From Mizuhopecten yessoensis (lineage: Eukaryota): DNA of 64,000 nt. Below the pieces are notes generated by a model. The model had not been told where the DNA came from, ran no database searches, and saw only the letters and a list, made by a program, of their open reading frames with translations. Each line of letters begins with the position of its first letter. Position 1 is the first letter of the stretch. Of this stretch, positions 41,497-53,811 are shown one piece after another. Made by a program: the position numbers and the translations under genes. The stretch is from NCBI RefSeq assembly GCF_002113885.1, contig NW_018404492.1, positions 6,553,255 through 6,617,254 of the forward strand. The letters are read 5' to 3'.

Positions 41497-44400
41497 AACG
41501 CCAACGACAATCCAAGACATCAGCGACCTAGGCTCGAATCACATGCCGTACCAAGAAATCCCACTAAAGGTGGTGTAAGTGTATTCCCTTCACGTAATAA
41601 TGATAGACATCACATTGAAGATGAACGCGGACCGACCAGAAGTAAAACTAGACAAGCTGGTGACGACAGAAACACCTCAGTTGCTGGGAGATCTACATGC
41701 GCTAGACGCCACTCTCCTAAAACCATTGATAACAACGAAGACGAGAAAAAAGGATGTGCTTTGTTCTGCACCTATTGTTGCTGTTGTTGCGACTCATTGG
41801 ATGATGCATACTATTACGACTCCGATGATGAAGAAAGCGAGGACGATGAAAATCCAAAAGAAAGGGGCACATCTGCGAAAAAAGGCCATGCAGTTGCAGC
41901 TGTATCTCAACACACGTCTAGTGGTGACAAAAATATTGACAAAAATATATCAAACGATAAAAATAGGGAAACATCAAAAGAAAAACCGAAAACACAACAA
42001 GGTCCAACAAATGCTAAAGAACCCGAAAGTAAAGAAGTGAAAGCAAAGAAGAACAAAGAAAAAAACCCCAAAGAACCAAAAGATAAAGAAATGAAAGAAA
42101 AGAATAAAAAAGATAAGAGAAACAAAGGAAATGCATGTTGTGCAGGTTGTATAATTCCATCGGACAGCGATGATATCGAAGATTCAGATTATGAGGAGGA
42201 ATGGGATTATGATGATGACGATGAAGGAATCAAAAGATCTCCAAATAGTTGTGACAAAAATATTGACAAAAATATATCAAACGATAAAAATAGGGAAACA
42301 TCAAAAGAAAAACCGAAAACACAACAAGGTCCAACAAATGCTAAAGAACCCGAAAGTAAAGAAGTGAAAGCAAAAAAGAACAAAGAAAAAAAAACCAAAG
42401 CACCAAAAGATAAAGAAATGAAAGAAAAGAATAAAAAAGATAAGAGAAACAAAGGAAAAGCATGTTGTGCAGGTTGTATAATTCCATCGGACAGCGATGA
42501 TATCGAAGATTCAGATTATGAGGAGGAATGGGATTATGATGATGACGATGATGGAATCAGAAGATCTCCAAATAGTTGTGACAAAAATATTGACAAAAAT
42601 ATATCAAACGATAACAATAGGGAAACATCAAATGAAGAACCGAACACACAACCAGATCCAACAAATGCTAAAGAACCCGAAAGTAAAGAAGTGAAAGCAA
42701 AGAAGAACAAAGAAAAGAAAAAAAAAGAATCAAAAGATAAAGAAATGAAAGAAAAGAATAAAGAAGAAAAGAGAAACAAAGGAAATGCATGTTGTGCAGG
42801 TTGTATAATTCAATCGGACAGCGATGATATCGAAGATTCAGATTATGAGGAGGAATGGGATTATGATGATGACGATGATGAAATCAGAAGATCTCCAAAT
42901 AATTTAAACAATAAAAACGGAATAATGCCAACGACTGCCGGTAATCAAAAGAGGGGAAAATCCGTAATAGGCCGTCCTAAAAGTAACAAAAACTTCATAG
43001 ACGAAAGGCAGAAAAAAAATAATGAAATACCCACTGCAAAAGACACACGTAGCAATCAAATGGTGTGCTGTTGCTTTGGTTATGAAAGTGACGACGAGTA
43101 TTTCGACGATTGTGATGATGAGTATAGTGAGGAGGAAAACTATGACTCTGATTCACTCGAAAGCCCAGAAAATAAAGGAGCAACAGCAATTATTGGAACC
43201 AATACTGCTGCGAGAACGGAAGGGAAAGGCGGCCGAAAAACTGCAAAAACACCCCGCCCGCGATCGGGGAAACGGAGTACATCGAAGAAATCAAAAGACA
43301 ACAAAAAGTGCAAAGCTTGTTTTCTGTGCAGGATAAAGTGTATTGGATGTGCAGCGTGTTGCAAAAAGAAACAAATGGGCGAAGAAGAAAGCAATTACGA
43401 TTCTGACGACGATGACCTCTATGACAGTGATGATGATGAAGATGCAGCAGATGATTACACGGTGATTGCGGCCGGAGGAGCCGCCGCATCGGTGACAGGG
43501 GTGCATGCTTCTAAATCAGGAAAAGCTAGAGTGTACAGATCGAAACGCAAAGCAAAACCCAAGAATATTCCAAATTATATGAAAAAGAAAAGAATCTGCT
43601 GCTTTGTTATCAAACGTTCTGAAAAAAACTGTAAACAAAATACCAAAAAAGCGAGTAAAATATCTAAAAAGAGAAAAGTAAAAGAAAGTACAGCAAATCA
43701 AAACAAAACAGACACAATAAACATGCCAAATGAGAACATCGACGTTGCTGACAAGAAAACAACAAAGCCACCGATACTGGTTGCATCTGCATTAGAAGCG
43801 ACGCCGGAAGAATATAACAATGTGCGTAATGATGAAAAGATAAACAATGCACTTGACTCGTCTACGACAAATAACCGAATATTCAATGAAAACAGAACTA
43901 ATACTTATGCTCAATCAGGCGCCGTATCTGGAACACAAACAATCCAAAATCAAGGAACGCGAACAAACCAAAATGTCACAGAGAAAAATCCACTGACGAA
44001 AACCAAACCCGTGGAGTCGTATATGGACGCAAAATACGGCGCAACTAAACCCAATGTTACTTTTGCTGAAGATGTTAACCGGGGCCAGAGTTATCTAAAC
44101 CAAAGCAACATTGGCAAAAATTATGATGGTTCGAGCAACAGTACAAAAGCAAAAACTCCAGAACCTGTTCTTTTGACCAAGAATACAGCAGAGAAAAGGA
44201 ATGCGGCAGTGTCTGCCTTGTTTGCATCAAGCAATACTGCAGTTGAAACAAGTAAAGTGACAGGTGTAAATAGATCTGCAAATGAAATTACAAAAAATGA
44301 AGACCAACGGTCAAATGCTAATAATCGGCGTTCTGACGATGCGACTAGTGATGTTCCTTCGGAAACGAAGAAAACACAAGAGGAAAGGAAGACAGAACGA

Positions 44401-45630
44401 AAGGAAAAGAAGAAAGAAAAAACAAAAGCGGTGATGACTTTGTTGTCAGGAAGCCTTTTCCCCAAAAGTAGCGCGAGTTCAATAACATCAATAACGAACC
44501 AGACAACTAGAAATGGTGGCCAATCATTGAACCATCAGACTACATGGACAGCTGGTGCTCTAACGGCCGCTGTACCCGTGTCGTTATACAAAGATCGAAA
44601 CACCAGCAACAATAATATAACTGATGGACCTGCTGAGCCCGAACGGCACAATTCAAATAACCCAAATGAATCTCTACATAACACTGTGCCGAACGGAGGA
44701 GCGATATCCAGCACTAATGGGTATAACCCTATAAATATTGACGACAATCAATCAAATAACCATCATTTAAGTGGCTCCGAAAATAATGGTATGCAAACGA
44801 CTGCACTATCTATGCTTGATTCGCAGCACACCGACCGGAAACCTATCTCAAATTCAAATCAAAACCAATCTGGATACAATCAACCAATCAGAAATGATCA
44901 TTCTTACTATTCTGTTGGTGATAATGCGGTGACTGCAATGGCTGCATCGACAGCAGTCAATCAAACAAATGGAATAAACACGGGCCAGAATAGTAGTCTA
45001 ACAGCGGCAAATCAAACCAAACCGCCCACAATCCCGGTAAAGAGCGATGGAATCCCTCCCCAAGGAGTTGGCATGAAAGCAAGAGGTCGTAAAAACTGGA
45101 AGGCAGTTGCTTCTTTGGCAGTAGCGAAGGAATTTACGATGCCCAACATGAAGGCAGATTGGGATGTAACGGGAGGTAACTCGAACAAAGGGGTCGGACA
45201 AGATAAAAGAGAACCTACATCTAAGTTTGCAGCAAGTGTCTCTGCCATGATGGCGAAACAACACTTCATTAAGGCAAGAGAGCCTCGTAAAAACGAGCCT
45301 GCATGGGACTTATTGGAAGGAAAACCAAAAGACATGCAAACAGAAGAAATTATTCCTAAAACAACTATGCGTAAGAGCAGGAGCTTGAATACGCTTTTTG
45401 AGAATGAAACGGACATATTTTCCGTTGATCTACCAACAAAACGACGAAAAAAACGCCAAGAAGATTTTGATTGGGATGCAATCTCTTCAATGGCAAGTGA
45501 ACGAGGAGCAAATCGCCCACCTCGCTTCAACCAGCCTAGTATATTGATGGACGATAGCAATCCCATTACAAACACGAGGTTCCAAGGAGGGCCTTCACGA
45601 CGGACTTCGCTCACAAATATACGTCATTGA
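41497..45630 (+). CDS. Uncharacterised single-pass membrane protein, 4.1 kb terminal exon (low-complexity cytoplasmic region)
   Basis: Acceptor TGTTTTCAG at 41496; the frame is open from 41497 (NANDNPRHQ...) and continuous with the 1289 aa ORF 41761-45630. Confidence 0.88.
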   Translation, partial: NANDNPRHQRPRLESHAVPRNPTKGGVSVFPSRNNDRHHIEDERGPTRSKTRQAGDDRNTSVAGRSTCARRHSPKTIDNNEDEKKGCALFCTYCCCCCDSLDDAYYYDSDDEESEDDENPKERGTSAKKGHAVAAVSQHTSSGDKNIDKNISNDKNRETSKEKPKTQQGPTNAKEPESKEVKAKKNKEKNPKEPKDKEMKEKNKKDKRNKGNACCAGCIIPSDSDDIEDSDYEEEWDYDDDDEGIKRSPNSCDKNIDKNISNDKNRETSKEKPKTQQGPTNAKEPESKEVKAKKNKEKKTKAPKDKEMKEKNKKDKRNKGKACCAGCIIPSDSDDIEDSDYEEEWDYDDDDDGIRRSPNSCDKNIDKNISNDNNRETSNEEPNTQPDPTNAKEPESKEVKAKKNKEKKKKESKDKEMKEKNKEEKRNKGNACCAGCIIQSDSDDIEDSDYEEEWDYDDDDDEIRRSPNNLNNKNGIMPTTAGNQKRGKSVIGRPKSNKNFIDERQKKNNEIPTAKDTRSNQMVCCCFGYESDDEYFDDCDDEYSEEENYDSDSLESPENKGATAIIGTNTAARTEGKGGRKTAKTPRPRSGKRSTSKKSKDNKKCKACFLCRIKCIGCAACCKKKQMGEEESNYDSDDDDLYDSDDDEDAADDYTVIAAGGAAASVTGVHASKSGKARVYRSKRKAKPKNIPNYMKKKRICCFVIKRSEKNCKQNTKKASKISKKRKVKESTANQNKTDTINMPNENIDVADKKTTKPPILVASALEATPEEYNNVRNDEKINNALDSSTTNNRIFNENRTNTYAQSGAVSGTQTIQNQGTRTNQNVTEKNPLTKTKPVESYMDAKYGATKPNVTFAEDVNRGQSYLNQSNIGKNYDGSSNSTKAKTPEPVLLTKNTAEKRNAAVSALFASSNTAVETSKVTGVNRSANEITKNEDQRSNANNRRSDDATSDVPSETKKTQEERKTERKEKKKEKTKAVMTLLSGSLFPKSSASSITSITNQTTRNGGQSLNHQTTWTAGALTAAVPVSLYKDRNTSNNNITDGPAEPERHNSNNPNESLHNTVPNGGAISSTNGYNPINIDDNQSNNHHLSGSENNGMQTTALSMLDSQHTDRKPISNSNQNQSGYNQPIRNDHSYYSVGDNAVTAMAASTAVNQTNGINTGQNSSLTAANQTKPPTIPVKSDGIPPQGVGMKARGRKNWKAVASLAVAKEFTMPNMKADWDVTGGNSNKGVGQDKREPTSKFAASVSAMMAKQHFIKAREPRKNEPAWDLLEGKPKDMQTEEIIPKTTMRKSRSLNTLFENETDIFSVDLPTKRRKKRQEDFDWDAISSMASERGANRPPRFNQPSILMDDSNPITNTRFQGGPSRRTSLTNIRH
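41924..42900 (+). repeat. Three in-frame 327 bp (109 aa) coding tandem repeats
   Basis: GTGACAAAAATATTGAC at 41924, 42251 and 42578; units are near-identical. Confidence 0.95.
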
Positions 45631-46826
45631 AAGTGATATCACCAAATTTCAGCAATGACAGAGGCTTCACCAAACTTAGTTCTTCCGGAACTGACGTGGA
45701 CGTCACCAACATTCAACATTGAGATGGGAGTTATAAACATTTGTCATTCTTTTATAATTGGTGACACGAGTATCCGGAACTGTGGACGACGAATATCCTT
45801 TTTTTTTAATAGACATTATATTGTAAATACCTTGGATAAATCCACTCTGGTAGCATTCCATCGATGTATGTAGGCAATTGCGTACAAAAGGTAACACATT
45901 ACACAGTTAACGTAGGTGTTATGCATGTGTATGGCATGATTTATTAAGAATCTAAACATAATTGATCATCAACTCAACTTGTCAGTTGACTTCAAACAAT
46001 CGTTGTATGCATAATGCACTTATCATACTACTTGTGAAATATTAAGATTTTCTTAAAGATTTCACAGCAAGAAGCAATACAAACGATGTGTAAGCATTAA
46101 TCTACAGTGTTAAATAGTGTTGGGTATCAGAAAGCAATAATCAGTAGACTATCACTAGGCTACATGGTTGAAAATATATCGAAAAAACCTCGTAGTGTTC
46201 ACCTCTCACCTGCGATAAATTTGTTGATAACATCACAGACATTCATTGTGTAAATATATGGTGCTTTATACAATCTGGAAATTAAAAACCGAAGAGCGCT
46301 CGCAATGTACACATAGTAATAAATCACGTAACCATTTACAACTGTGATAAATAAACGAACTTTGTTTTAACTTCTGACGATGTCAAACGATGTTTTTTAG
46401 CTAGGATAAAGAATTTATTTATTTAATGATATGAAAATGCATTTGATAGGGCAATATATTGTTATTTTTTAATTGTGCGGCCATGTCTATCACAAATTGG
46501 GTGCAACCTATATCGATTTGTTACTCATATCTACCCATACCAGGAAGTAAGGAACATTCGCCTTATCTATACCTGAGACAAAGGTACATAGTATTGTGTC
46601 GAGTATTACTCACTGGATCGTTTTATATGAATAAGTGGGCTCCTAGGGTTCTTTGATGTTTGTTGTAATGCAAATATTCAAACTAGCATTTAATTAACAA
46701 TATAAAGGTTCATTTGTACAAGACACTTCAGTCGAACAAAAAAAAGCGTCATTTATTGAGGAAATAAGTAACTGGCATTAAGAAAACAAAACGACAGATT
46801 TCATTGATTTTAAGAAGAAATCGAGG

Positions 46827-47354
46827 ATGGCTGCCGTCATGACAAGACATGAAGTTGGCGTTTGTGATGTGGGATCCGCCGTGCGCGTGCCGAATAACGC
46901 GATAGCAAAGCTGATGTTTTATACGAAATGTATTTGCGACCTCATCAACCTGTATGATATGGACGAGATTTTCAAAAGACTGACTGATTTCGAGAGATAT
47001 TACCTTCTAACGGAGCTAGAAATAGATAAACTTATCATCTTCTGCATGAACTATTCACCGGAGGTTTTGGCGGACAAGTGTTTGTTTCACAACGAAGATA
47101 TTTGTGGCGATTCCATTAACAAGTTTATTGAATTGTCCTCGGTTGATCGACAGCTGATCGTGTCAGACGACATCATGCTTGGTGGAACGCAAACACGTGT
47201 CAAACGAATCATGTGTTACAAAATGGAATGGCTGATGGAGTACTATCTGGCACCGATGTTGGTAATGAAGAGAAGACACGATAAGATTATGAAAATCATT
47301 GCAATGCACAATAGGGAGGTGGCAAATGCTGACTGCTGCTGCATTATATTGTAA
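46827..47354 (+). CDS. Uncharacterised intronless 175 aa protein with C-terminal CaaX (CCCIIL), paralog A
   Basis: Intact ORF with AGGATGG start and TATAAA at 46701; ~72% identical to the 50968 ORF over the first 150 aa (hand count, 42 mismatches). Confidence 0.9.
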   Translation: MAAVMTRHEVGVCDVGSAVRVPNNAIAKLMFYTKCICDLINLYDMDEIFKRLTDFERYYLLTELEIDKLIIFCMNYSPEVLADKCLFHNEDICGDSINKFIELSSVDRQLIVSDDIMLGGTQTRVKRIMCYKMEWLMEYYLAPMLVMKRRHDKIMKIIAMHNREVANADCCCIIL

Positions 47355-48802
47355 GAAGAAAACACACAGTGCTCATATTCAAGTGGCATTCCCTAACAAA
47401 TTATTCGCATTATGAAGTTTCGCCAATATTTGTTTTTCTTGAAAAATGTTACATCAATTATCATAATGTTACAGTGATTAATATATCATTTTGAATAATC
47501 CTTGTTGGGAGACGTCATGACAACACGGTGATTTGTCGCTATATATCAACAGAGAATGATACAGCAAAGTTGTATACAAATGTATATAAAGATTTATCGT
47601 TATTATTAGTTTCAAGTGTTCAGCAAAATAATGTTAACATTTAGACGTTATATCACGTAGTTGGAATACATGTGCATTTTAAAATCAACTCAAGGAAAAA
47701 CGCCGAGATATCCATGTATGGAACTGCTATGAGCCAGATTACTTAAGCATTTTTTAATTTGGTAAATGCAACCTAGTCCATGTCAATTGATAGAAGCATT
47801 ATTGGCTGTAAACCGACTAACAAATAAATAAAACAGACTGCCTTTCTTCAGGGATGATATGACAGTAAATAAAATCATCACGTTAACCTTTACTTGACGA
47901 GAAGTCTTTTTTATGAGGTATCCTTATTACTGCAATTTGACTCGCTCATCTATGTTCATTTATATCAAATAAAATCGTACAGCTATACTTTAATCAAGTC
48001 AAAAACATTTCCTTGTTGGAGTTCCGACCCTTGTTATTTTTATTTATTTAAAATTGAATGCCGTTGAACCAATTATGGATAGAAATTTCATTTAATATCC
48101 ATTTAGGCAATTTTGAAAAGTAGTCTTAACTTTGAGGGAAAATATAGCAATTGCTAAACATCATTGGCTGACAAATATTTTAACTTTTGAAAAGATCTGT
48201 TTTATATGAATTACGTGAAGTATATCAATATAAATCATCAATACAAATCATCAATACAAATGGTCTCGCATTTTGTCACACAAAATATGTATTAATTTTA
48301 TACGAGGTCATAAATGCGTAGCAATACGTTGATCGTACATGCATTAAACAGTGTAGTATTCATGACAATTTTTTTTTAACCATTTTCCTTTTTGATTTTT
48401 TGACAGATTCCAAGCTCTCCGCACATTTTCCAGCAAGTTATATTGTAGTATTAATTTAATTATCTATGTACAGTTTTGTTCACATAATTACCTTACATAA
48501 TGTATATTTTGGGCCATTTTACTGGCTTGTATATCAAAAACATTAAACCACGACCTTGTCCTCACTAATGCAGAAATTGTGATCATTTCTCTTTCTCCAA
48601 TTCCTTTATTGTAAATTTTGTGACAGTATTTTGAATACCCTAGTGAAACCTGCTCAATTAAAAACAAAATCAACCCTTCTGTTAGATGAGGCTCGTAGAT
48701 TCCTGGCAAAACAAACATACTAGAGAATAGTAGTTGTAAAAGATGCACATTGTGCATAGCTTCAAAGTCTCTTTACAAGCTTCAGCTGAGAGAACTTCCC
48801 TT

Positions 48803-48860
48803 TATTTCAGCGGTAGAGCGTTCAACCAGAAAGTCTGGGGTCGCAGTTTTACTCCCCAGC
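48803..48860 (+). mobile_element. tRNA-derived (SINE-head-like) remnant; related copies at ~49105-49160 and ~56030-56088
   Basis: A-box-like TCAGCGGTAGAGC and decayed B-box; the 56030 copy keeps GGGTTCGTTCCCC. No intact cloverleaf. Confidence 0.5.
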
Positions 48861-49244
48861 GAACGTACATATTATTTCCACTGCAACTTTTCTATAACAA
48901 AATTGATGCCGTTGACCTATCTAACTCCAGATAGTGCAAAGCCCTTTGGTGTGAAGTAAATTAACCTGGCTTTCAGTAGTCTTTGAGGGTGAAGACTAGA
49001 TAAAATGGAGAGTGCTATATAAGGATGTGCCTTGTACAATGTTTAGTGTGAAAGTCATCTCACAAGTCCAAATCATTAGCTTCGGCTCGAGGAAAGTTTC
49101 CTTTATCTCAGCGGTAGAGCATCCGACTAGAAAGTCTGGGAGTCTGGAATTCCCCAGCGAACAAATATCCTTTACGCTACTTCGTTTCCATTACATAAGG
49201 ATGAAACATATTCAGTTCACATGTAGGATTGCTCAAACCTTCCA

Positions 49245-49330
49245 TTAACTCTTTGATCCTTTTCTCATAAGTTAGTATATTGTTATTTGTACAAAAGAAT
49301 TTGTATCACTGCTGAACAAATCCTGATTTC
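49245..49330 (-). pseudogene. Decayed duplicate of NR2C2AP last exon
   Basis: Reverse strand reads FSSDTNSFVQITIY*LMRKGSKS* versus FTNSTDFFGRITIYQLMILGSKS* in the real exon; it has a frameshift and an internal stop. Confidence 0.8.
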
Positions 49331-50967
49331 TTTAAAGCAGGGAGCTTACTCGTGAACGAATCATCCACACATTAAAAATATCTAGTGTAATCCTACAACA
49401 AAAATCGACATGAAAAGAGGGATATAAGACTTAAGAGGCACACCTTCCAATTTCAATTAGCTGAAGTAAAAGGATCAAAGATTAGAAAAACAAGAATTGT
49501 ATATTTTACATGACGTAAATTGATCGACAACACTCTTCAGTCATAGCAATCTGTGATTTAAAAAGACATTACGCCATTGCGATTATTTTTGATTTTTTTT
49601 TTATCACAATCAGTTGGTAGTATTTAATTATCCTAAAATATACTTTCCAAGCGAATACTTTAAATATCAATTGGAAATACATTTCAATAAGAACCCCCTC
49701 ATATGGACCTGATAGTGATCTGATATGGTCACGTGCACGCCAAAATAGAAACCTTGGGTCGATATGTCATATATCAGCGAACTTGAGATAAAGGATTAGC
49801 CAATTGGAATCAAGGAAAGTCGGACTATTTGTAATAAGATATTTTAGTGTTGATTTCATCATATTGATCAATGATTAGTGACATAATACTCAGACCTTTG
49901 GGTAGCTATCAACACATTTTGAATAGTCATTCTTTCTGTAGACGTCTTGGGTAACCCTCTCTGGCAGCATTCTTCCAATAACATTGCATCAAAATATGTC
50001 ATCAACCGAGTGACATCAGAGAAATTAACCCATAGTATCATCAAGACTGATGACTTTTTACACACTTAACGCTTATATGGTTATGTGCATGGTGTGATTG
50101 ATGTTTAACAAGCTACTAATTTAACAGAACATCTACCCAACTTGTTGATTGACTTGCAAACCACGTGGTATTCATCAAGATTTTCTAAACAATTAATAGT
50201 AAGACGACATAAAAATTGGCCTCCAGTTTGTAAACACCACATACCATGTTAAAGACCGATGTGTACATGATATCGGTAAGCAATAATCAATGGGCTATCA
50301 CTGGACTTTAACACACCACGTGGTCCTAAATACATCTATATATCAAACACAGTGTTCACCTGTCACCTGCGGTACACTTGTGTGTGATAAAAACACAGAC
50401 GTTCATTGTGTATATACTAGGAGCTGTAAATACTAAATATATTTATGTAACCAATTATATTTGTGATTTAAAAAACACACACGAACATTGTAATAACTTA
50501 ATATAACGACGTCACAAACTTTTTACATTTAACAAGTAGTGGGTTATTTAATATGAAATCACAACGCATCGGATACACTGTAGGGGAGTATAATGCTACT
50601 CTAAAATTTTGTGTAGTATTGAGTCTCTGTAATGGACGGGTGCAACGTGTATCCACCTGTTACCCATATTTGCCTATAGCAGGAAGTAAATGGATTTAAA
50701 AATATGCAGATAGAAGGAACATAATCAACAATACACGTACCTGATATAGAGGTATATATTATTTCGTCGAGCTTTACATACAGGATTTTGCACATTAAGT
50801 GGGCAGTATCAACTGGAATTCTTTGTGGTAATGCTGATCAGCAAACAAAGTTTTAATCATCAATATATAGGGTTCAAACCCGAATTGGTGTCATTCAATA
50901 AGGACACAAGTTACTGACATTACGAAAACGAAACGACCGATTTCAAAGACATCAGAAGAAATCAAAG

Positions 50968-51507
50968 ATGGCTGCCGTGATGACAAGGCGCGAAATGGGC
51001 GTTCGTGATGTGGGATGCTCCGTGAGCGTCCCGGAAGACGTCAAAGCAAAACTGATGTTCTACTTGAAATGTATTTGTGACCTCATCAGTCTCGATGACC
51101 GAGACGAGGATATGAAGAGACTGACAGATTTCGAGAGATATTACGTTCTAACGGAACCAGAAGTAGATCAGCTGACCGTCGTCTGCATTCTCATTTCACC
51201 AGACCTTTTGGCGGATAAATGTATATTTCACAGTGAGGATATGTGTGGTGATTCCAGGAACAAGTTTTTCGAATTGTCCTCAATTGATCAACAGCTGATC
51301 GTGTCAAACGACATTCTTATTGGCGGAATGCAAACACGTGTCAAAAGAATAATGTGTTATAAAATGGAATGGCTGATGGAATACTATCTGATACCAATAT
51401 TGGTACTGAAGAGAAGGCTCGAACTGAAAATGGCATTGGCACAAGAAATCGTGGCAATGCATGAAAGGGAGGAGGCAGATGCTGGATGCTGCTGCACTAT
51501 ATTGTAG
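50968..51507 (+). CDS. Uncharacterised intronless 179 aa protein with C-terminal CaaX (CCCTIL), paralog B
   Basis: Intact ORF with AAGATGG start and TATA-like TATATAG at 50864; shares AKLMFY.KCICDLI, RLTDFERYY and QTRVKRIMCYKMEWLMEYYL with paralog A. Confidence 0.9.
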   Translation: MAAVMTRREMGVRDVGCSVSVPEDVKAKLMFYLKCICDLISLDDRDEDMKRLTDFERYYVLTEPEVDQLTVVCILISPDLLADKCIFHSEDMCGDSRNKFFELSSIDQQLIVSNDILIGGMQTRVKRIMCYKMEWLMEYYLIPILVLKRRLELKMALAQEIVAMHEREEADAGCCCTIL

Positions 51508-52284
51508 CGAGTCAACACACTGTTGCTAAAACTCAAACATCATTCCCTCATTAACTAGACGCATGATGAACAGTTTTGCCAAACTTGGTTTTTCTTGAAG
51601 TGTTATCGTCTCCAATTGGTTAGGAGATGATACACGAATATTTGCTAACAATGGTACAAACACCAATTGTGATGTCATAATATTTACATCTCTCCCTTCT
51701 TCAGCTTAGTAAACTCTGGCTGTGCATAAATAAATGCATACGCAATGAAAAAAGGCTAGACGGATTGATACCTGTTTCAAATGTGGCGCCGTTCTCGCTT
51801 CAGCTAGATAAGTGTTCGATGACAGCTATTGTTTGGTCTTCAATATCTAAACACATGAAACATATTCGGGATCCATTATGTCTGATTATACACAATGAGA
51901 TGCTGGCCAACGTCTTATGACATGGATGCAGATTCAAAAAAAATTGACGATAAAGTAAACAATGGAGGCTTCCTTTTACGACGTTCGACCGCGTCACTAC
52001 CAAAGAAGTGTGTCAATGCGTGTACATAACGACCGTCATAAATGAATACAAATGTTCCAAGTGCTAAGAGTAGTACTTCATTAAAAACTTAAAAGCGATC
52101 AAAAGAAGTAAAATAGTGTTGTGCACTGCGTATTTTCTAAATTTACCCATATATCGATGTAGATTCACCGAAACTATATTATCTTAGCAAAAACGGCTAC
52201 CGTAGTTACCATCGTAGTAACCCGCTTCAGCTGTTATTTTCTTTGTTTACCATTTGAACATTATTTATGATGTAAATATAAGGA

Positions 52285-52418
52285 TTGACCTTCATTTTGA
52301 CGGCGTATACGGTAGTGTGAACGCAGTTGACAACGGAACATATTATATGGTGCGCTAGAATATGTTCCGTTGCCAACTGCGTTCATACTATCGTATACGC
52401 AGGCAAAATAAAGGTCAA
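52285..52418. repeat. Long hairpin (60 bp arms, 14 nt loop), probably the end of a non-autonomous element
   Basis: 52285-52344 is the imperfect reverse complement of 52359-52418; the segment is absent from duplication copy A. Confidence 0.85.
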
Positions 52419-52425
52419 ACTTTAA

Positions 52426-53811
52426 ATATATCAACAGAGAGTGATACAGTGATTATTAAATCATTATTTATCAACAGAGATTGATACAGTGATTATTATA
52501 TCTGTATTAATCAACAGAGAGTGATACAGCTATAACTATATCATTATATATCAAAAGGGAGTGATACAGTGCACGTGGTTACTGTATCTTTATAAAATGA
52601 TAAATCAACAGGGAGAGATACAGTGATTACTATAACGTTATAAATCAAAAGAGTTTGATACAGTGGTTACTATATCTTAAGGTATCAACAGAGATTGATA
52701 CAGTGGTTATTTTATATTTATTTAGGTATCAACAGAGATTGATACAGTGGTTACTATATATGTATGTATCAACAGAGATTGCTACAATGGTTACTATATC
52801 TTCAGGTATCAACAGAGATTGATACGATGGTTTTTTTATATTTATTTAGGTATTAACATAGATTGATACAGTGGTTACCATATATTTAGGTATCAACAGA
52901 GATTGATCCAGTGGTTACTATATATTTATGTATCAACAGAGATTGATACAGAGGTTACTATATCTGTATGTATCAACAGAGATTGCTACAATGGTTACTA
53001 TATCTTTAGGCATCAACAGAGATTGATACAATGGATACTATATCTTTAGGGATCAACAGAGATTGATAAAGTGGATACTATATATTTAGGTATCAACAGA
53101 GATTGATCCAGTGGTTATTTTATATTTATTTAGGTATCAACATAGATTGATACAGTGGTTACTATATAATTAGGTATCAACAGAGATTGATCCAGTGGTT
53201 ACTATATATTTAGGTATTAACAGAGATTGATACGATGGTTTTTTTATATTTATTTAGGTATTAACATAGATTGATACAGTGGTTACCATATATTTAGGTA
53301 TCAACAGAGATTGATACAATGGTTATTCTATATTTATTTAGGTATCAACATAGATTGATACAGTGGTTACTCTATCTTTAGGTATCAACAGAGATTGATG
53401 CAATGGTTATTTTATATTTATTTAGGTATCAACAGAGATTGATCCAGTGGTTATTTTATATTTATTTAGGTATCAACATAGATTGATCCAGTGGTTACTA
53501 TATATTTATGTATCAACAGATATTGATACAGTGGTTACTATATATTTATGTATCAACAGAGATTGATAAAGTGGTTACTATATATTTATGTATCAACAGA
53601 TATTGATACAGTGGTTACTATAACTTTAGGTATCAACATAGATTGATACAGTGGTTACAATATCTTTAGGTATCAACAGAGATTGATGCAGTGGTTACTA
53701 TATCTTTAGGGATCAACAGAGATTGATAAAGTGGTTACTATATCTGTAGGTATCAACAGAGATTGATACAGTGGTTACTATATCTTTAGGTATCAACAGA
53801 GATTGATACAG
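52426..53811 (+). repeat. 40/44 bp minisatellite, ~33 copies
   Basis: TATCAACAGAGATTGATACAGTGGTTACTATATCTTTAGG head-to-tail; the 44 bp variant carries TTTTATATTTATTTAGG. Confidence 0.97.

What the first reader, a model, noticed from the sequence alone, without database searches (positions are those of the whole stretch)
46827..51507. Duplicated intronless proteins of unrecognised family with prenyl + palmitoyl tails
Seen: two intact ORFs with a compact Cys-containing core of ~150 aa (KLMFYxKCICD, SPxxLADKCxF, CGDSxNKF, IMCYKMEW), a helical linker, and C-termini CCCIIL and CCCTIL. Both stayed open while flanking duplicated DNA decayed, implying selection; substitutions cluster around residues 8-26, 41-49 and 64-80. 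Established: CaaL is a GGTase-I signal, and adjacent Cys are often palmitoylated as in small GTPases, but there is no P-loop here. Inference: a possibly undescribed membrane-anchored domain; intronlessness raises retrogene or horizontal origin.
Basis: partly seen in the sequence, partly recalled or inferred. Interest (0 to 1): 0.7.

Follow-up and report, generated by a model that had tools for sequence, protein, structure and literature searches.

The report
Unnamed membrane-tethered protein domain family
Two neighbouring scallop genes encode small proteins whose tails carry a textbook lipid-attachment signal and whose 130-residue body belongs to a large, unnamed family (corals, bivalves, rotifers, gut ciliates) with no recognisable fold that is almost always fastened to a membrane by one of several interchangeable anchors.

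Summary
ORF A (46827-47354, 175 aa, ends CCCIIL) and ORF B (50968-51507, 179 aa, ends CCCTIL) are intact, 68% identical tandem duplicates. Both appear transcribed as unspliced mRNAs and are under purifying selection (dN/dS about 0.4 overall, about 0.13 in the core).

They are not orphans. A profile search finds 1,053 clusters. This genome has nine loci, and every intact copy ends in a CaaX box.

Named or inferred hosts are scallops, a pearl oyster, the coral Porites, bdelloid rotifers and, on (CCCCAAT)n-capped chromosomes, trichostome ciliates.

No Pfam, NCBIfam or PDB sequence match exists. Confident AlphaFold models (pLDDT 87-90) match no PDB or viral structure (best Z 3.5-3.8).

Across the family the same N-domain precedes a CaaX box, a LITAF zinc ribbon, a hydrophobic tail anchor or an internal transmembrane helix, with at least 14 anchor switches on the tree.

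Best reading: a cytosol-facing module that must sit on a membrane. In the scallop pair it would be held by geranylgeranyl plus palmitoyl groups. What it does there is unknown, most likely non-enzymatic binding.

The retrogene idea fails for this pair, which arose by tandem DNA duplication. Ancient transfer between ciliates and animals stays open.

The scan had already noted one paralog elsewhere in this genome (s1-574246).

The parts
46125..47443 (+). Copy 1 of the tandem segmental duplication. It contains gene A plus decayed upstream remnants at 46125-46256 and 46499-46550.
   Evidence: blastn of the two halves: 46748-47443 against 50890-51599 at 77%, 46125-46256 against 50271-50416 at 71%, and 46499-46550 against 50638-50689 at 81%, all at a ~4.14 kb offset. 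The repeat finder family D4.
46676..47930 (+). Apparent unspliced mRNA of gene A: about 151 nt of 5' UTR, the CDS, and about 576 nt of 3' UTR.
   Evidence: One 1,254-nt contig of transcriptome-sized run X1 lies collinearly here with no joints. Depth is zero at 46000-46599 and 48000-50199. A few raw RNA-seq reads of X20 lie on the CDS.
46827..47354 (+). CDS of gene A, 175 aa plus the stop codon.
   Evidence: ORF list. 68% identical to B. Orthologs in Pecten maximus and Ylistrum balloti.
46881..47273 (+). Conserved N-domain of A (residues 19-149). It is alpha/beta: five helices, a small sheet with a beta-hairpin, and a closing helix.
   Evidence: AlphaFold2 domain-only model with pLDDT 89.5 and pTM 0.86. 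Conserved motifs VPxNxxAKLMYYLxCV, LxDYxNY, P78, F87, NxFY, IxIGG, VxKIM, W135, Y140, P143. No PDB match.
47268..47333 (+). Helical, fast-evolving linker of A (residues 148-169).
   Evidence: Helix 148-168 in the full-length model. dN/dS is about 1 in codons 141-170. Length and composition vary across the family.
47334..47351 (+). C-terminal CCCIIL of A: a CaaL box (C-I-I-L) preceded by two further cysteines.
   Evidence: Sequence. The CCC and the terminal I-L are invariant in four scallop sequences. A CaaX box is present in all eight intact paralogs.
50271..51599 (+). Copy 2 of the tandem segmental duplication, containing gene B.
   Evidence: same alignments as for copy 1.
50388..51888 (+). 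Apparent unspliced mRNA of gene B.
   Evidence: Collinear contigs of 1,495 nt (X1, 50388-51882) and 1,381 nt (X3, 50508-51888) with no joints. X20 raw RNA reads lie on the CDS.
50968..51507 (+). CDS of gene B, 179 aa plus the stop codon. This is the slower-evolving copy and the closer one to the Pecten maximus ortholog.
   Evidence: ORF list. B is 74% identical to P. maximus against 65% for A. B has 9 lineage-specific changes against 19 in A.
51487..51504 (+). C-terminal CCCTIL of B: a CaaL box (C-T-I-L) preceded by two further cysteines.
   Evidence: Sequence. The same CCCTIL ending occurs in Pecten maximus, and CCCVIL in Ylistrum.

Best explanation
Genes A and B are real, expressed, intronless tandem paralogs. 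They belong to a large and so far unnamed eukaryotic protein family.

Each protein has three parts. The first is a conserved N-domain of about 130 residues with an alpha/beta fold that I could not match to any solved structure. The second is a variable helical or disordered tether. The third is a C-terminal membrane anchor.

In the scallop pair the anchor is CCC-a-a-L. I infer the following steps. The cysteine at position -4 is geranylgeranylated by GGTase-I, because the final residue is Leu and the -2 residue is Ile. The last three residues are then trimmed and the new C-terminus is methylated. The one or two cysteines just upstream are S-palmitoylated. Together this fixes the N-domain stably to the cytosolic face of the plasma membrane or an endomembrane.

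Membrane tethering is the family's constant feature, and the anchor is exchangeable between CaaX, LITAF zinc ribbon, tail anchor and internal transmembrane helix.

The N-domain has no conserved His/Asp/Glu or metal-ligand set. I therefore think it is a non-enzymatic binding or adaptor module that acts at the membrane surface, rather than an enzyme.

Shown here: the genes are real, apparently transcribed and under selection; the family's size and spread; the exchange of anchors; the lack of any known family or fold match. Inferred: the lipidation itself, the membrane location, and the adaptor role.
For: Real genes: intact ORFs. Collinear gene-sized contigs in transcriptome-sized runs, with no coverage between the genes, plus raw RNA-seq reads. 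dN/dS 0.37-0.45 overall and 0.12-0.15 for codons 111-150. A neutral simulation keeps each ORF open only about 2-3% of the time. Orthologs in two other scallops. Unique flanks, so not a transposon.

Family: 1,053 clusters at E<=1e-3 and 113 at E<=1e-30. Nine loci in this genome.

Anchors: all eight intact paralogs end in CaaX (CCCIIL, CCCTIL, CCTIL twice, CAIM, KKKDCVIL twice, CTVM) despite 32-44% identity. Among the top 150 relatives, 84 have CaaX, 17 a hydrophobic tail, 10 a LITAF-like ribbon and 5 an internal TM helix. The X residue is mostly L, F or I. 69 of 103 CaaX members have extra Cys in the six residues upstream, and 8 are polybasic. Pfam finds LITAF PF10601 in 6 of 120 members. At least 14 anchor switches are needed on the N-domain tree. 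The CCC and the terminal I-L are invariant in scallops while the adjoining linker drifts at dN/dS about 1.

Unknown domain: 0 of 120 members hit Pfam over the N-domain. Nothing in NCBIfam or PDB sequence searches. Models with pLDDT 86.7 and 89.5 give a best Foldseek E of 0.69 to 1.5 and a best VIA Z of 3.8 and 3.5.

Non-enzymatic: the conserved positions are mostly hydrophobic or aromatic. The only near-invariant polar residues are K/R28, C/S35 and N98.

Cytosolic orientation: ciliate members P0087 and P0135 carry the domain at the N-terminus, then one TM helix, then BspA/PARCEL-type LRRs, which are usually extracellular.
Against: No experiment shows lipidation, membrane binding or any partner. 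The CaaX reading rests on sequence rules and conservation.

About 15-20% of relatives have no recognisable anchor. Some are fragments, and some have other tails such as the ZZ-finger fusion P0115. Tethering may therefore not be universal.

Cys35, with Ser as its main alternative, together with K28 and N98 could be a catalytic set, so an enzyme is not excluded.

The 'no known fold' result rests on predicted models. AlphaFold DB, InterPro and HHpred were not available.

Expression looks low in the two true RNA-seq runs sampled. Runs X1 and X3 are only presumed to be RNA.
Confidence: 0.7

Rival explanations
1. The N-domain is a membrane-bound enzyme. Cys35 (or Ser) would be the nucleophile, assisted by Lys28 and Asn98, acting on a lipid or on a membrane-proximal protein substrate. 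The anchor would serve only to place it next to that substrate.
For: Cys35 is 90% conserved and Ser is its main substitute. K/R28 is 95% conserved, N98 99% and Y32 99%. Small globular enzymes with C-terminal membrane anchors are known, for example the PLAAT/HRASLS acyltransferases and PRL phosphatases (from my own knowledge).
Against: There is no conserved His, Asp or Glu. Nearly every residue of the helix that carries K28 and C35 is conserved and hydrophobic, which looks like a buried core helix rather than an active site. The fold resembles no hydrolase or transferase. Copy A tolerates changes at otherwise conserved positions 33 and 101.
Confidence: 0.15
2. The genes came into animals by horizontal transfer or retroposition. 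The intronless state and the patchy distribution across ciliates, cnidarians, molluscs and rotifers would reflect transfer between ciliates and animals, not vertical descent.
For: Every locus in this genome has an uninterrupted coding sequence. Coral and rotifer members were also called as single ORFs. The family occurs in trichostome ciliates on (CCCCAAT)n-capped chromosomes (telomere identity from bioRxiv 10.1101/2022.01.05.474053). Among animals I could name only a few phyla.
Against: The A/B pair arose by tandem DNA duplication that carried upstream sequence with it, not by retroposition. Ciliate and animal sequences form two clades separated by a branch with support 99, and neither nests inside the other. 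No relatives turned up in prokaryotic genomes or IMG/VR, though those pattern scans have limited sensitivity. Only the best 150 of 1,053 clusters could be inspected, so the patchiness may reflect sampling.
Confidence: 0.2
3. The ORFs are chance open frames, decaying pseudogenes or transposon ORFs with no cellular function.
For: They are short, intronless, multi-copy ORFs. One paralog (L008) carries a premature TGA. Read counts are low in the true RNA-seq runs.
Against: dN/dS is well below 1. Neutral drift would close each ORF about 97-98% of the time. Orthologs are conserved across scallops, and homologs occur across phyla. The flanks are unique in the genome. Gene-sized contigs occur in transcriptome-sized runs.
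Confidence: 0.02
4. The core is a zinc- or disulfide-stabilised cysteine-rich domain, which is the reader's 'compact Cys-containing core'.
For: Copy A has seven cysteines in residues 13-130.
Against: Only Cys35 is conserved. Positions 37, 73, 85, 93 and 130 hold Cys in 9-52% of members and otherwise A, V, L, F or G. That is the pattern of buried hydrophobic sites, not of metal ligands. The cytosolic location implied by a CaaX box argues against disulfides (established knowledge).
Confidence: 0.03

Closest known systems
Dually lipidated CaaX proteins: C-terminal tails of RhoB, RalA/B, brain Cdc42, PRL phosphatases and K-Ras4B
   Same: There is a C-terminal C-a-a-L/X box with an aliphatic -2 residue. 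The 'second signal' is either adjacent cysteines (CCCIIL, CCCTIL, CCTIL) or a polybasic run (KKKDCVIL), as in small GTPases (comparison from my own knowledge).
   Different: The globular part is unrelated. It has no P-loop, no Ras or phosphatase Pfam hit, and no structural match.
LITAF/CDIP1 family (Pfam PF10601, LITAF-like zinc ribbon membrane anchor)
   Same: Ciliate relatives such as P0004 carry the same N-domain in front of a genuine PF10601 zinc ribbon. This is a module that embeds in the cytosolic leaflet of membranes.
   Different: The scallop proteins have no LITAF domain. The N-domain is not the Pro-rich N-terminus of LITAF proteins.
Ykt6 compared with transmembrane SNAREs, as an analogy for swapping anchors
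   Same: One conserved cytosolic module is fixed to membranes by prenyl plus palmitoyl groups in some members and by a C-terminal transmembrane helix in others (comparison from my own knowledge).
   Different: There is no longin or SNARE domain. The only SNARE hit is in 1 of 120 members at E 0.0036. The tether is 20-80 variable residues, not a SNARE motif, and no longin fold was found.
Uncharacterised NCBI proteins: Pecten maximus LOC117334756, Ylistrum balloti LOC132562083 and LOC132551096, Porites lobata CAH3117798.1, Pinctada imbricata KAK3088853.1, and unnamed Adineta and Rotaria proteins
   Same: All are true homologs of the N-domain.
   Different: None carries a name, a domain annotation or a paper.

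Membership tests
CaaX prenylation substrates (GGTase-I type) | Cys exactly four residues from the C-terminus | tested here: met
   A ends C-I-I-L and B ends C-T-I-L. The same holds for all eight intact paralogs.
CaaX prenylation substrates (GGTase-I type) | Aliphatic residue at -2, and Leu/Phe as the last residue (the GGTase-I preference) | tested here: met
   Ile at -2 and Leu at the end in A, B and the scallop orthologs. Family-wide the last residue is L 56, F 12, I 6 against Q 10, S 6, M 5.
CaaX prenylation substrates (GGTase-I type) | The motif is kept by selection rather than present by chance | tested here: met
   The CCC and the terminal I-L are invariant among four scallop sequences while the adjacent linker has dN/dS about 1. 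84 of the top 150 relatives end in a CaaX-type box.
CaaX prenylation substrates (GGTase-I type) | Actual attachment of a geranylgeranyl group, and of palmitate on the upstream Cys | not testable with these tools
   This needs metabolic labelling or an in vitro GGTase-I assay.
Ras-superfamily small GTPases | P-loop GxxxxGK[ST] and a G-domain | tested here: not met
   Residues 11-18 read GVCDVGSA. No Ras Pfam hit. No G-domain fold match.
LITAF family (PF10601) | C-terminal zinc ribbon: CxxC, then a hydrophobic stretch, then CxxC | tested here: not met
   No PF10601 hit in A or B. It is present only in some relatives.
Longin/SNARE (Ykt6-like) | N-terminal longin fold plus a SNARE heptad motif | tested here: not met
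   No Pfam longin or synaptobrevin hit. No longin structure among the fold matches.
Zinc-binding cysteine-rich domains | Four conserved Cys/His ligands | tested here: not met
   Only Cys35 is conserved (90%). The other Cys positions hold Cys in 9-52% of members.
Processed retrogene (for the A/B pair) | The copy is limited to the mRNA, with no shared upstream DNA | tested here: not met
   Collinear homology lies 280-700 bp upstream of the ATG at the same 4.14 kb offset. That is outside the transcript contig of gene A, which starts at 46676.
Any Pfam-A / NCBIfam family (N-domain) | A profile HMM hit over residues 19-149 | tested here: not met
   0 of 120 members hit in Pfam. 0 of 7 hit in NCBIfam over the N-domain. 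The family profile against PDB sequences gives a best E of 0.05.

The most novel reading that the evidence does not exclude
The N-domain is a truly new protein fold. It would define an unrecognised, ancient membrane-surface module shared by ciliates and by cnidarian and spiralian animals. Its function would require attachment to the cytosolic face of a membrane, and evolution has met that need at least 14 times over by swapping prenyl/palmitoyl, LITAF, tail-anchor and transmembrane anchors. It could be the cytoplasmic signalling or adaptor end of receptor-like proteins, as in the ciliate LRR fusions. Alternatively it could have moved between ciliates and animals by ancient gene transfer.
Probability: 0.4. 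Interest if true: 0.75.

Novelty: new variant of a known kind. Interest (0 to 1): 0.62.

Why it matters
Lipid-anchored and tail-anchored proteins are a well-known kind. Here the cargo is a conserved 130-residue domain that no family database names and that matches no solved structure, yet it has over a thousand sequence clusters in animals and ciliates.

The repeated exchange of anchors is a natural experiment. It indicates that being on the cytosolic face of a membrane is essential to what this domain does. That gives a concrete starting hypothesis for an uncharacterised family.

It also adds a clean candidate to the small list of geranylgeranylated and palmitoylated proteins outside the GTPases. 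In addition, it offers a well-defined target for structure determination and for a Pfam/InterPro entry.

Tried and rejected
- **Sequence and family libraries.** Pfam, NCBIfam, PDB sequence and PDB profile searches gave nothing for the N-domain.
- **ESM Atlas.** Two queries gave no usable hit and no stored model.
- **Fold searches.** Foldseek against PDB and BFVD, and VIA-align against 48,161 chains, were run on a full-length and a domain-only model. Only noise-level rows came back. ZDHHC9, macrodomain and POU-specific/lambda-repressor-like helices score Z 3.2-3.8 and stand no higher than unrelated rows. I rejected these as relationships.
- **Prokaryotic and viral relatives.** Pattern scans of GTDB genomes and IMG/VR gave no confirmed relatives. 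The wide alignment was too diverse for the genome scan.
- **Literature.** Searches by architecture terms and by accession numbers found nothing relevant.
- **Selenocysteine reading of L008.** Its TGA sits at a Cys position, but no SECIS element was found, so I treat it as a nonsense mutation.
- **Transposon origin.** The flanks are unique in the genome.
- **Zinc cluster.** The cysteines are not conserved.
- **First anchor classifier.** It was wrong because the HMM ran into the tails. It was redone with a domain-only HMM.
- **Taxon names.** Two cluster look-ups returned almost no names. Taxa came instead from the P0027 search, a third look-up, and telomere repeats on the contigs.
- **Model coordinates.** They were not available to scripts, so surface conservation could not be mapped.


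Full report
**1. Observation.**
The window is from a scallop genome, G000 contig C1165, 987.6 Mb in 82,659 contigs. From memory these figures match the Mizuhopecten yessoensis assembly, but I did not verify that.

A is 46827-47354, 175 aa, ending CCCIIL. B is 50968-51507, 179 aa, ending CCCTIL. They are 68% identical over their full length, and all the quoted motifs are present.

The DNA is alignable over 46748-47443 against 50890-51599 at 77%. Two short upstream remnants (46125-46256 and 46499-46550) align at the same ~4.14 kb offset. Everything else between the copies has diverged beyond recognition. This is a tandem segmental duplication that carried upstream DNA with it, so it is not a retrocopy.

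**2. Are they real genes?**
Two transcriptome-sized public runs of the same species hold single collinear contigs over each gene. These are 46676-47930 (1,254 nt), 50388-51882 (1,495 nt) and 50508-51888 (1,381 nt). There are no joints, and depth between the genes is zero. A true RNA-seq run contributes a few reads on both coding sequences. So both appear to be transcribed as unspliced mRNAs, probably at a low level in the samples tested. The caveat is that runs X1 and X3 are only presumed to be RNA.

dN/dS between A and B is 0.37 (NG86) or 0.45 (YN00), with dS of about 0.42-0.49. The core codons 111-150 are at 0.12-0.15, and the linker is near 1. A substitution-only neutral simulation at that divergence leaves an ORF open only about 2-3% of the time.

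B is the conservative copy. It is 74% identical to the Pecten maximus ortholog and has 9 lineage-specific changes. A is the faster copy, at 65% identity and 19 changes, including changes at family-conserved positions 33 and 101.

The flanks of A are unique in the genome, so this is not a transposon ORF.

**3. The family.**
The word-index search found orthologs in Pecten maximus (LOC117334756) and Ylistrum balloti (LOC132562083). It also found a 254-aa relative, P0004, in which the same N-domain precedes a LITAF-like zinc ribbon.

The exhaustive profile search then found 1,053 clusters at E<=1e-3, 664 at E<=1e-10 and 113 at E<=1e-30.

This genome has nine loci plus one fragment, all as single open frames. 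Eight are intact and all end in a CaaX box: CCCIIL, CCCTIL, CCTIL (twice), CAIM, KKKDCVIL (twice, 99% identical copies on separate contigs) and CTVM. The ninth, L008, has a TGA where its tandem neighbour L007 has a Cys codon. No SECIS element was found, so it is a nonsense pseudogene or allele.

That matches my locus L009.

**4. Who has it?**
Named members are:
- scallops
- Pinctada imbricata
- the coral Porites lobata
- the bdelloid rotifers Adineta steineri, Adineta ricciae, Rotaria magnacalcarata and Rotaria sp. Silwood1

The rotifer-type member P0027 lies on 19-52 kb contigs next to GPCR, MACPF, NHL and ART-TPR genes.

A FastTree of 243 N-domains splits into two clades, each with support 99. 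Clade I (119 sequences) holds all the scallop paralogs and the coral and rotifer members. Clade II (124 sequences) is rich in Ile, Asn and Tyr.

I sampled four clade II genes. All four lie on contigs of 0.8-2.3 kb with 21-25% GC. For three of them (P0209, P0087, P0064) the contigs are capped by (CCCCAAT)n/(GGGGATT)n, and L018 and L022 are capped at both ends. The fourth (P0004) has the same composition but no clean telomere.

Li et al. report (CCCCAAT)n as the telomere of all rumen ciliate morphospecies they examined (bioRxiv 10.1101/2022.01.05.474053). I therefore assign clade II to trichostome (gut) ciliates. This assignment rests on those four sampled members.

Pattern scans found no relatives in prokaryotic genomes or IMG/VR.

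**5. Anchors.**
I used a domain-only HMM to define the tails. The top 150 relatives divide as follows:

| Tail type | Count |
|---|---|
| CaaX | 84 |
| Hydrophobic C-terminal tail | 17 |
| LITAF-like zinc ribbon | 10 |
| Internal TM helix | 5 |
| Other tails (several Cys-rich and hydrophobic) | 22 |
| Fragments or no tail | 12 |

Pfam confirms PF10601 in 6 of 120 members and BRI3 in one.

The CaaX last residue is L 56, F 12, I 6, Q 10, S 6, M 5. Of 103 CaaX members, 69 have further cysteines within the six residues upstream and 8 have a polybasic run. This is the same 'second signal' logic as in small GTPases, a comparison I make from my own knowledge.

At least 14 changes of anchor type are needed on the N-domain tree. 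Ciliates alone have CaaX (P0064, ending CCCLIF), LITAF (P0004) and TM-tail (P0209) versions.

Longer members give further clues:
- P0087 and P0135 have the N-domain, one TM helix, then BspA/PARCEL-type LRRs. This is a receptor-like type II layout that puts the N-domain in the cytosol.
- P0115 has the N-domain followed by a ZZ zinc finger.
- P0025, P0005 and P0017 have two, three and four tandem N-domains respectively.

**6. The N-domain.**
None of 120 members hits any Pfam model over this region. NCBIfam, PDB sequences and a family profile against PDB give nothing.

AlphaFold2 gives a confident full-length model from a 120-sequence alignment (pLDDT 86.7, pTM 0.81). It also gives a domain-only model from a 129-sequence alignment (pLDDT 89.5, pTM 0.86). 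The predicted layout is a long, almost fully conserved first helix, four short helices, a small sheet with a beta-hairpin (IxIGG), and a closing helix. A helical tether follows.

Foldseek against PDB and BFVD has a best E of 0.69-1.5. Exhaustive VIA-align has a best Z of 3.8 and 3.5, with no row standing out. The tool notes that unmatched models typically still reach Z 7-8, so this model is unusually isolated. It also notes that a missing match does not prove a new fold. AlphaFold DB could not be searched.

The conserved positions are VPxNxxAKLMYYLxCV (21-36), LxDYxNYxxL (52-61), P78, F87, N98-x-F-Y, IxIGG (116-120), VxKIM (125-129), W135, Y140 and P143. There is no conserved His, Asp or Glu. 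Only Cys35 is a conserved cysteine. The others alternate with A, V, L and F, so this is not a zinc or disulfide domain.

**7. Interpretation.**
Shown:
- The genes are real, apparently expressed and under selection.
- The family is large and unnamed.
- A membrane anchor is the family's most constant accessory, and it is exchangeable.

Inferred:
- In A and B the -4 cysteine is geranylgeranylated and the adjacent cysteines are palmitoylated.
- This holds the N-domain on the cytosolic face of a membrane.
- There it most likely acts as a binding or adaptor module.

An enzymatic role using Cys35, Lys28 and Asn98 cannot be excluded.

An intronless coding sequence is a family-wide trait in this genome. 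The ciliate/animal distribution is compatible with either ancient transfer or ancient origin with losses. The two-clade tree does not decide between them.

**8. Limits.**
- Only the top 150 of the 1,053 clusters could be inspected, and most carry no taxon name.
- Lipidation, localisation and function are untested.

Noticed in passing
window 41761-45630 (+): A 1,289-aa open frame lies immediately upstream. It has three 327-nt repeats (41919-42872, 95-98% identical) that encode polybasic, Cys-cluster (ACCAGCII) and acidic/Tyr modules. There is no Pfam hit. It is separated from gene A by a stretch with no transcript coverage (46000-46599). The scan noted it already as s1-517226.
   Followed up: partly
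window 52378-53800: A long array of 40-44-nt tandem repeats (more than 30 copies) sits just downstream of gene B.
   Followed up: no
L008 (G000:C5240:1437037-1437504, minus strand): This paralog has a single in-frame TGA exactly where its tandem neighbour L007 has a Cys codon (LINK*FF against LINKCFF). It is otherwise intact, including the CTVM tail. No SECIS element was found, so it is probably a recent nonsense mutation.
   Followed up: yes
L005 and L006 (G000:C3248:17516-17956 and C4840:155083-155523): Two copies of the KKKDCVIL paralog are 99.2% identical in nucleotides but lie on different contigs. They are either haplotigs or a very recent duplication.
   Followed up: partly
L033 (G000:C4270:1096469-1096606): A 46-aa fragment of the domain lies about 7 kb downstream of the intact paralog L003. 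It is probably a decayed tandem duplicate.
   Followed up: no
L014 / L015 (ENA metagenome scaffolds, 2.3 and 1.8 kb): A ciliate gene-sized chromosome carries a receptor-like family member (N-domain, TM helix, BspA/PARCEL LRRs). In L014 a ribosomal protein S19e gene sits about 108 bp downstream on the same molecule.
   Followed up: partly
window 51679-51716: RNA-seq run X23 piles 21 reads on this 38-nt stretch only, with unrelated sequence on both sides. It looks like a short element shared with other transcripts, not expression of gene B.
   Followed up: no
L010-L013 (rotifer-like metagenome contigs): The tail-anchored member P0027 sits between a MACPF gene and a 776-aa ART (ADP-ribosyltransferase)-TPR gene, with NHL and 7TM receptor genes nearby. 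Identical contigs recur in many metagenomes.
   Followed up: no
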